From contig NC_058130.1 in assembly GCF_016433145.1 (NCBI RefSeq), positions 382,426,952-382,490,951 of the forward strand: a DNA stretch of 64,000 nt, written 5' to 3'. Of this stretch, positions 7,021 through 7,791 are shown piece by piece; positions within the stretch are counted from its first letter, which is position 1, and each line of letters begins with the position of its first letter. Under the pieces are notes generated by a model. It did no database searches. It saw only the letters and a program-made list of their open reading frames with translations, and had not been told where the DNA came from. The position numbers were made by a program, and so were the translations under genes. This DNA comes from Gracilinanus agilis. Taxonomy: Eukaryota.

Positions 7021-7357
7021 TGGATTATTTGATATTAACCAAACTCAGAATTCTCACTGAAAGGTCTCCCACCTTTATTACTCACAGAAAACATCTCTAC
7101 ATGTTTACTTATGGGATGAGACATAAACTCGAGCCATAGGTGACTCTCCCTATGTTATCCTGAAAAATGGGCATTTCAGGAGGGTTCTCATGAGACTGAT
7201 TAAATCCTACTTTTTCAAGAAAGCATTTGGTGTATTCACTATCCAGACAATAGCCATATTCTGAGGTCAATTTCGTATAAGGATTTAGGACTGAATGTTG
7301 GCTGCATTTCTCTGCAACTTCATCAAATTCACAGTCACTCTTTGGATTTTTATTTAC

Positions 7358-7631
7358 CTTGATACTAGAGTCACAAATTTTTCTCAAAATGAAGTCAAAG
7401 GGACTCTTATTCATGCCTGTGGGAGGGCCAGATCTTTCCACAAAAAGGTACAGCTTTGTAGACATCTCCTTTGCTTCGAAATTAGTCTCTGCCTCTTGAT
7501 ATTAGAGTCACAGGTTTCTCTCAAAATGAAGTCACAGGGACCCTTATTCATGACTCCTGGAGGGCCAGATCCCTCCACAAAAAAGCGCAGCTTTGCAGAC
7601 ATATCCTTTTCTTCAAAGTTAGTCTCTGCCT
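7358..7631 (-). repeat. Tandem 137-bp duplication in the retrocopy (copy A 7495-7631, copy B 7358-7494)
   Basis: A gapless manual alignment gives 20 mismatches in 137 nt (~85% identity). The copies encode [14 protein letters not shown]...DSNIK and [14 protein letters not shown]...DSSIK in different frames. Confidence 0.95.
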
Positions 7632-7791
7632 CCACAAAGAGGAGATTTTGCACATTCTCCAGCATGGCCTCCCTGTACAGCTCTTTCTGAGAAGGGTCGA
7701 ACAGGCACCACTCCTCCTGGGTGAAGTCCACAGCCACATCCTTGAATGTTATTGACCCCTGGGATGGGGGCCTCTCCAACTGGGTGGCCAT
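7411..7791 (-). CDS. Residual 126-aa ORF: intact KRAB-A box plus 45-aa spacer plus frameshifted tail (KRAB-only product if expressed)
   Basis: Sequence [51 protein letters not shown]. The KRAB-A DV and MLE motifs are intact. The ORF ends at TGA 7413-7411 after the frameshift caused by the 137-bp duplication. There is no evidence of expression. Confidence 0.3.

What the first reader, a model, noticed from the sequence alone, without database searches (positions are those of the whole stretch)
7352..7632. 137-bp duplication in the KRAB-ZNF retrocopy with both ends on splice sites: a fossil of a chimeric or exon-repeated mRNA
Seen in sequence (minus strand): ...TTTGTGG|AGGCAGAG...ATCAAG|AGGCAGAG...ATCAAG|GTAAAT. 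The unit starts exactly where the canonical 127-nt KRAB-A exon ends, which is the acceptor of the finger exon (1-nt ambiguity). It ends exactly at an internal AAG|GTAAAT donor consensus. The two copies differ at 20/137 sites with no gaps. Established knowledge: KRAB-A exons are typically 127 nt and end in phase 1, and KZNF genes occur in tandem clusters. Inference: the template RNA used an internal donor 137 nt into one finger exon and spliced it to the acceptor of a second finger exon. That second exon could belong to a duplicated exon or a neighbouring paralog, or arise by exon repetition/trans-splicing. If both copies had been identical at insertion, 14.6% divergence would make a perfect 16-bp TSD unlikely (0.854^16, about 0.08). 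This favours two already diverged paralogous exons, i.e. an inter-gene chimera in a KZNF cluster preserved by L1 machinery.
Basis: partly seen in the sequence, partly recalled or inferred. Interest (0 to 1): 0.72.

Follow-up and report, generated by a model that had tools for sequence, protein, structure and literature searches.

The report
Retrocopy preserving a twice-spliced KRAB-ZNF segment
An opossum zinc-finger pseudogene, made by reverse transcription of an mRNA, carries the same splice-bounded 137-base piece twice, most likely because two already different copies of that piece were spliced one after the other; it is a neat but ordinary fossil of an aberrant transcript.

Summary
On the minus strand, units A (7631..7495) and B (7494..7358) are 137 nt each and differ at 20 sites with no gaps. 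They sit inside an intronless KRAB-ZNF copy flanked by a perfect 16-bp target-site duplication.

About 90 marsupial relatives show that both ends of the unit are splice junctions. It always begins directly after KRAB-A or KRAB-B. In 12 of 84 instances the protein leaves the family sequence directly after the unit's last residue. No relative has unit joined to unit.

Unit A and the KRAB box nearly match a Gracilinanus agilis gene model, P0019: 44/45 and 49/53 residues. B matches it at only 33/45. A relative-rate test gives 1 versus 12 changes (p = 0.002). A and P0019 also share rare residues where B keeps the family majority. So A and B were already different when the RNA was copied.

This argues against a DNA duplication after insertion and against repetition of a single exon.

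- whether the unit is a separate exon or the first 137 nt of the finger exon;
- whether A and B came from one gene with a duplicated 5' block or from two neighbouring genes.

This is a new example of a known kind, of modest interest.

The parts
8028..8043 (-). 5' copy of the target-site duplication (AAAAGTATAAGATCCA)
   Evidence: Perfect 16-bp direct repeat with 4194-4209. Chance expectation is 0.007 in the space searched.
7792..8027 (-). 5' untranslated exons of the retrocopied mRNA
   Evidence: Translations match the N-terminal extensions of family gene models, for example the KEEVSPPWGS and EIFCSLT stretches of P0002 and P0012.
7632..7758 (-). KRAB-A exon equivalent, 127 nt, ending in phase 1
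   Evidence: Pfam KRAB positions 1-41 of 42, E = 1.7e-22. The start (GSITFKDV) and end (NLLFV) coincide with the exon junctions seen in chimeric gene models.
7495..7631 (-). Unit A, 137 nt, in frame with KRAB-A
   Evidence: It is 44/45 residues identical to the unit of P0019, XP_044523114.1 of Gracilinanus agilis.
7358..7494 (-). Unit B, 137 nt, frame-shifted relative to A, with a stop at 7413..7411
   Evidence: It is 71% identical to A in protein (32 of 45) and at most 77% identical to any relative. Read in its own frame it continues openly into the spacer (the 118-aa open reading frame 7109..7465).
7109..7357 (-). Spacer that follows the unit in the family (VNKNPKSDCEFDE...), ending at the first stop
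   Evidence: 70-74% identical to P0002, P0040, P0031, P0050 and P0049.
5900..7108 (-). Decayed C2H2 zinc-finger array with at least two frame changes and many stops
   Evidence: 84-bp periodic array. Pfam zf-C2H2 and zf-H2C2_2 match. Frame changes 1 to 3 to 2 appear in tblastn against P0040, P0048, P0049 and P0031. Stops are visible in the translations.
4210..5899 (-). 3' untranslated region with old repeat fragments, AATAAA at 4229..4224, and a short A-rich tail at 4217..4210
   Evidence: Sequence read. Repeat fragments match other places in the window at 67-80%.
4194..4209 (-). 3' copy of the target-site duplication

Best explanation
The insert at 8027..4210 (minus strand) is an L1-type processed copy of an mRNA from a marsupial KRAB zinc-finger cluster.

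In this family a 137-nt segment (AETNFE...DSNIK) has a splice acceptor at its 5' end, used after KRAB-A or KRAB-B. It has a splice donor at its 3' end. In the template RNA, the donor of one copy of the segment (A) was spliced to the acceptor of a second, homologous and already diverged copy (B). B brought the spacer, the fingers and the 3' UTR with it.

The segment starts in phase 1 and ends in phase 0, so the A-B join is out of frame. The transcript was therefore non-productive.

The most likely source is one transcription unit that runs across a tandemly duplicated 5' block (KRAB-A plus unit), or across two adjacent paralogs, with the second KRAB-A exon skipped.

Shown here: the duplication, its splice-site ends, the retrocopy hallmarks, and the divergence of A and B before copying. 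Inferred: the genomic arrangement of the source.
For: Splice-site ends:
- In 84 unit instances from about 90 relatives, the unit always begins directly after KRAB-A (...NLLxV|) or KRAB-B (...SSCP|).
- In 12 instances the protein departs from the family sequence directly after the last residue. Seven go to unrelated exons and five to another KRAB-A exon.

Retrocopy hallmarks:
- A perfect 16-bp target-site duplication that begins with AAAA, an AATAAA signal followed by an A-rich tail, and all exon junctions fused.
- The window holds no other KRAB-ZNF copy.

Divergence before copying:
- KRAB and A match P0019 at 92% and 98%, while B matches it at 73%.
- The relative-rate test gives 1 A-only change against 12 B-only changes, chi-square 9.3, p = 0.002.
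- At unit positions 9, 12 and 16, A and P0019 share rare states (D, A, F). B has the states held by 55, 41 and 39 of 70 other units.
- P0019 is a separate spliced locus. Its tail matches dispersed repeat copies in the window but nothing downstream of the retrocopy. In the window, A is not followed by GT.

Plausible source arrangement: seven family gene models already show KRAB-A-unit-KRAB-A-unit arrangements.
Against: - The source locus, and whether a B-type copy lies downstream of A there, were therefore not seen.
- No annotated protein is closer than 77% to B, 74% to the spacer or 88% to the fingers, so the donor of the 3' half is unidentified.
- An AU test on the 45-column alignment cannot reject A and B as sisters (p = 0.50). 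The case rests on unequal change counts and shared rare states at the protein level.
- That the window's species is G. agilis is only a lead from earlier notes.
Confidence: 0.7

Rival explanations
1. A tandem DNA duplication of 137 bp arose inside the retrocopy after it was inserted (replication slippage or unequal exchange). The two copies then drifted apart by 14.6%.
For: Tandem head-to-tail arrangement with no gap. The differences are spread evenly over codon positions (about 7/7/6, my count), as expected for neutral drift. The rest of the pseudogene is heavily decayed.
Against: Both ends fall on family splice junctions to within 1 nt. For a random duplication in a 3.8-kb insert this has a chance of roughly 1e-5 or less (my estimate). 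A has 1 residue change relative to P0019 and B has 12, although both would be neutral (p = 0.002). B keeps family-majority residues where A and P0019 share rare ones. A perfect 16/16 target-site duplication has probability at most about 0.08 if 14.6% divergence built up after insertion.
Confidence: 0.07
2. One and the same exon was repeated in the RNA, by trans-splicing between two pre-mRNAs of one gene or by a reverse-transcriptase jump. A and B were identical at insertion and diverged afterwards.
For: The splice-exact ends fit exon repetition, a phenomenon discussed in the trans-splicing literature (papers listed). No relative shows a unit-unit join.
Against: The same evidence as for the first rival applies. 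Unequal change (1 versus 12), shared rare states of A with P0019, and the intact target-site duplication all argue that A and B differed before insertion.
Confidence: 0.08
3. The retrocopy and its duplication are old. The 5' part (KRAB plus A) was later overwritten by gene conversion from the P0019-type gene, which makes A look young and B look old.
For: There is a marked asymmetry. KRAB and A match an annotated protein at 92-98%, while everything from B onward matches at most 74-88%. The fingers are heavily decayed.
Against: Conversion between dispersed loci that stops right at the A/B junction is an extra coincidence. It still does not explain the splice-exact ends without splicing. The perfect target-site duplication argues against great age. 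The asymmetry is expected anyway if the source's finger part is non-coding and so not annotated.
Confidence: 0.05

Closest known systems
Processed pseudogenes as fossils of splice variants (Shemesh et al. [quoted passage not shown]
   Same: An L1-made, intronless copy records which exons were joined in an old mRNA, including a non-productive isoform.
   Different: Here the recorded isoform contains two homologous, diverged copies of one splice-bounded segment in series. This is not an ordinary exon skip or alternative splice site. I could not read the 2006 paper itself.
PIPSL, a retrogene made from an intergenically spliced PIP5K1A-PSMD4 transcript (PMC3747384)
   Same: A chimera assembled at the RNA level by splicing across neighbouring units, then reverse-transcribed and inserted by L1, with one target-site duplication around the whole.
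   Different: PIPSL joins two unrelated genes in frame and became a working gene. Here the two parts are paralogous, the join is out of frame, the copy is a dead pseudogene, and two separate parent genes are not demonstrated.
Tandemly duplicated exons whose joint inclusion breaks the frame, such as U2AF1 exons 3 and Ab (PMC5224494)
   Same: Two homologous exons of equal length that is not a multiple of three. mRNAs containing both carry a premature stop.
   Different: In U2AF1 the pair is known to be adjacent in one gene and used mutually exclusively. Here genomic adjacency and alternative use are untested.
Double-KRAB or read-through gene models in marsupial KRAB-ZNF clusters (P0001, P0028, P0029, P0031, P0060, P0062, P0073)
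   Same: The same family and the same donor at the end of the unit, spliced onward to a downstream duplicated 5' block.
   Different: Those models join the unit to the next KRAB-A exon, which stays in frame. The retrocopy joins unit to unit, skipping KRAB-A, which is out of frame. No annotated model shows this join.

Membership tests
L1-mediated processed pseudogene (retrocopy) | Exons joined without introns | tested here: met
   The 5' exons, KRAB-A, unit(s), spacer and fingers are contiguous. In relatives the same junctions carry alternative partners.
L1-mediated processed pseudogene (retrocopy) | Target-site duplication flanking the whole insert, A-rich at its 5' end | tested here: met
   A 16/16 match, AAAAGTATAAGATCCA, at 8043..8028 and 4209..4194. 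Chance expectation is 0.007.
L1-mediated processed pseudogene (retrocopy) | Polyadenylation signal and poly(A) tail at the 3' end | tested here: met
   AATAAA at 4229..4224, then the A-rich stretch 4217..4210 just before the target-site duplication. The tail is short (8 nt with one T).
L1-mediated processed pseudogene (retrocopy) | An intron-containing parent gene elsewhere in the genome | tested here: inconclusive
   P0019 (XP_044523114.1, G. agilis) is a spliced model 95% identical over KRAB plus A. Its genomic DNA could not be fetched, and the window's species is not confirmed.
KRAB zinc-finger gene family | KRAB-A box followed by a tandem C2H2 finger array | tested here: met
   Pfam KRAB E = 1.7e-22. 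zf-C2H2 and zf-H2C2_2 match in stop-free pieces.
KRAB zinc-finger gene family | Intact reading frame (a working member) | tested here: not met
   Frame shift at the A/B join with a stop at 7413..7411. There are further frame changes and stops in the array.
Chimeric retrocopy of an intergenically spliced transcript (PIPSL type) | The join lies on splice sites of both partners, and one target-site duplication encloses the chimera | tested here: met
   The A/B join equals the family donor joined to the family acceptor. There is a single pair of target-site duplications.
Chimeric retrocopy of an intergenically spliced transcript (PIPSL type) | Two distinct parent genes, adjacent and on the same strand | not testable with these tools
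   No marsupial genome sequence was reachable.
Tandem exon duplication with frame-breaking double inclusion | Two homologous exons of equal length that is not a multiple of 3 | tested here: met
   137 nt each, 85% identical, and B shifted by +2.
Tandem exon duplication with frame-breaking double inclusion | Both copies lie as neighbouring exons within one gene | not testable with these tools
   As above. It is also unresolved whether the unit is a separate exon or the start of the finger exon.

The most novel reading that the evidence does not exclude
The A-B join records unit-to-unit splicing between two different KRAB-ZNF genes. This could be trans-splicing between paralogous pre-mRNAs, or regular read-through that skips a whole finger exon and the next gene's KRAB-A exon. 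It would mean that opossum KRAB-ZNF clusters routinely make inter-paralog hybrid RNAs that L1 can fix as DNA, which would be a route for shuffling effector and finger modules between family members.
Probability: 0.12. Interest if true: 0.55.

Novelty: new member of a known kind. Interest (0 to 1): 0.33.

Why it matters
Processed pseudogenes are one of the few records of which RNA isoforms existed in the germline in the past. This one shows that a marsupial KRAB zinc-finger cluster produced a polyadenylated transcript with two diverged copies of the same splice-bounded segment in series.

It fits a family in which duplicated 5' exon blocks and read-through models are frequent. It is a small, concrete data point for how KRAB-ZNF clusters mix exons at the RNA level.

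It also gives a handle on the exon structure of a marsupial-wide KRAB-ZNF subfamily, whose conserved AETNFE...DSNIK segment has a much-used donor at its end. The copy itself is dead, so no function is at stake.

Tried and rejected
- Word-index protein search with B plus spacer (127 aa) found nothing, because relatives are longer than the length filter allows. The full HMMER search then found 29 relatives.
There is therefore no evidence from DNA or RNA reads.
- The search of earlier findings by sequence returned nothing, which means nothing here. The word 'Gracilinanus' is in no note.
- I tested whether P0019 is a model on this very locus. Its tail matches only dispersed repeat copies upstream in the window, and nothing in the retrocopy's 3' part. 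I rejected the idea.
- A maximum-likelihood tree and AU test on the 45-residue unit were too short to separate (A,B) from (A,P0019), p = 0.50. I used the relative-rate and shared-state counts instead.
- I tried to decide between a separate 137-nt exon and the first 137 nt of the finger exon with an internal donor, using protein models only:
  - One old model (P0022) joins a finger linker directly to VNKNP.
  - In 26 of 62 strictly classified instances the residue after the junction is not Val, so no GT can be there.
  - Against that, the canonical KRAB-ZNF layout has the finger exon starting in phase 1, as the unit does.
  - Other internal donors in finger exons are used in read-through models (P0001, P0031).
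  - The question stays undecided.
- An assembly artefact is rejected, because two copies 15% apart cannot be a collapsed or doubled read.

Full report
**Observation.** On the minus strand the window holds two head-to-tail 137-nt units, A at 7631..7495 and B at 7494..7358. Tandem Repeats Finder gives period 137, 2.0 copies, 85% matches and no indels. A direct comparison gives 20 differences in 137 sites, 14 transitions and 6 transversions, without gaps. The 127 nt before A are a KRAB-A exon equivalent. Pfam KRAB matches positions 1-41 of 42 with E = 1.7e-22 and ends just before A. B is followed by GTAAAT. A is in frame with KRAB. Because 137 = 45 x 3 + 2, B is shifted and the frame stops at 7413..7411. 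Read in its own frame, B runs openly into the spacer.

**Setting.** The units lie in an intronless KRAB zinc-finger copy. A perfect 16-bp direct repeat, AAAAGTATAAGATCCA, lies at 8043..8028 and 4209..4194.
- The downstream copy follows an AATAAA (4229..4224) and a short A-rich stretch.
- The upstream copy lies right before sequence that matches the 5' exons of family members.
- Chance would give 0.007 such 16-mers in the space searched, and 1 of 300 shuffles gave one.
- The finger array is decayed, with at least two frame changes and many stops.
- No other KRAB-ZNF sequence is in the window.

This is a processed pseudogene of about 3.8 kb.

**Relatives.** A word-index search with B plus spacer was blank because of the length filter. 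The full HMMER search found 29 relatives. Two further word searches seeded with relatives brought the set to 90 proteins. All are marsupial KRAB-ZNFs, from Monodelphis, Gracilinanus, Sarcophilus, Dromiciops, Trichosurus, Vombatus and others. Earlier notes of this scan call the genome an opossum or mouse opossum. I did not confirm the species.

**The unit is bounded by splice sites.** I extracted 84 instances of the 45-residue unit (AETNFE...DSNIK) with their flanks.
- Upstream, the unit always starts directly after KRAB-A (...NLLxV|, 20 cases) or directly after a 32-residue KRAB-B exon (...SSCP|, most others).
- Downstream, about 72 continue with the spacer VNKNPKSD....
- Twelve leave the family sequence directly after the last residue. 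Seven go to unrelated exons (P0019, P0020, P0023, P0024, P0027, P0031, P0082). Five go to another KRAB-A exon (P0028, P0029, P0060, P0062, P0073).

No protein has unit joined to unit. That join is out of frame and so would not be annotated as coding.

**What I could not settle.** It could equally be a separate exon, with GTAAAT simply being the Val-Asn codons that open the next exon.
Other internal donors in finger exons are also used in read-through models (P0001, P0031).
- For a separate exon: in 26 of 62 strictly classified instances the residue after the junction is not Val, so no GT can stand there. One old model joins another sequence directly to VNKNP (P0022).

**Were A and B alike when the RNA was copied?** P0019 (XP_044523114.1, Gracilinanus agilis, 154 aa) consists of KRAB-A, one unit and a repeat-derived last exon.
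- It matches the window's KRAB at 49/53 residues and unit A at 44/45, but B at only 33/45.
- It is a different locus. Its tail matches only dispersed repeat copies elsewhere in the window. In the window, A is followed by AGGCAG, not by a GT donor.
- With P0019 as the third sequence, A alone has changed at 1 position and B alone at 12. The chi-square is 9.3 with p = 0.002, and the binomial p is 0.003.
- At unit positions 9, 12 and 16, A and P0019 share rare residues (D, A, F). B has the residues held by 55, 41 and 39 of 70 other units.

Two neutral copies born from one sequence after insertion should have changed equally and should not differ in this polarised way. The intact 16/16 target-site duplication points the same way, though only weakly (0.854^16 = 0.08). 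An AU test on 45 columns cannot separate the topologies (p = 0.50), so the argument rests on the counts above.

**Most likely mechanism.** A transcript ran across two homologous copies of the unit, and the donor of A was spliced to the acceptor of B. The resulting out-of-frame, polyadenylated RNA was reverse-transcribed and inserted by L1 machinery. Seven family gene models already show KRAB-A-unit-KRAB-A-unit arrangements (P0001, P0028, P0029, P0031, P0060, P0062, P0073). A duplicated 5' block, or two adjacent paralogs with the second KRAB-A exon skipped, is therefore the simplest source.

No annotated protein is close to B (at most 77%), the spacer (at most 74%) or the fingers (at most 88%). 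This fits a source whose finger part is no longer coding. That would also explain why P0019 is annotated as a finger-less protein. These last steps are inference.

**Rivals.**
- A DNA duplication after insertion would need both ends to fall on splice junctions by chance. It is also contradicted by the unequal change.
- Repetition of a single exon, by trans-splicing or a reverse-transcriptase jump, explains the ends but not the divergence before insertion.
- Gene conversion of the 5' part by the P0019-type gene could mimic the asymmetry. It needs a conversion tract ending at the A/B join and does not remove the need for splicing.

**Comparison with what is known.**
- Processed pseudogenes are known to preserve splice variants (Shemesh et al. 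2006, cited in PMC5470649).
- PIPSL is a retrogene made from an intergenically spliced transcript (PMC3747384).
- Duplicated exons whose joint inclusion breaks the frame are known, for example in U2AF1 (PMC5224494).

This case is a new example in a marsupial KRAB-ZNF cluster and not a new kind of event.

**Limits.**
- The run search had listed one run holding 32% of the sampled words of the stretch. It also listed many runs of another organism holding 8-10%. What those runs hold could not be examined.
- All comparisons with relatives are at the protein level.

Noticed in passing
window 6168-6287 (minus strand): An out-of-frame reading of the decayed 3' end of the finger array (KIPLERN...NFRNMISV) is 75% identical to an internal exon of the Monodelphis model P0031. 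That exon sits between a unit and the next KRAB-A exon. In the window it starts after CATCAG and ends before GTAAGG, a donor-like motif formed by Cys-Gly-Lys finger codons. This suggests the region was already non-coding and spliced in the common ancestor's gene.
   Followed up: partly
window 21891-22049, 32348-32446, 48968-49045 (minus strand): Dispersed repeat copies whose translation resembles (40-58%) the last exon of the G. agilis model P0019. That model's C-terminus is therefore repeat-derived and may be a gene-prediction filler.
   Followed up: partly
window 7626-7631 (minus strand), start of unit A; same in B at 7489-7494: The unit begins AGGCAG|AG, which offers a second AG six bases in. 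The second block of the G. agilis model P0001 lacks exactly the two residues (EA) that use of this inner acceptor would remove.
   Followed up: no
window 7000-8100 (run search): Seventeen runs of one coded organism, guessed to be RNA and spread over several studies, each hold 8-10% of the sampled 31-mers of this stretch.
   Followed up: no
window 4748-5088 and 5375-5591: Old interspersed-repeat fragments (67-80% identical to other places in the window) lie inside the retrocopy's 3' part. Whether they were in the parent's 3' UTR or were inserted later is unknown.
   Followed up: no
window 28271-28431: A run of 161 N (gap or masked).
   Followed up: no
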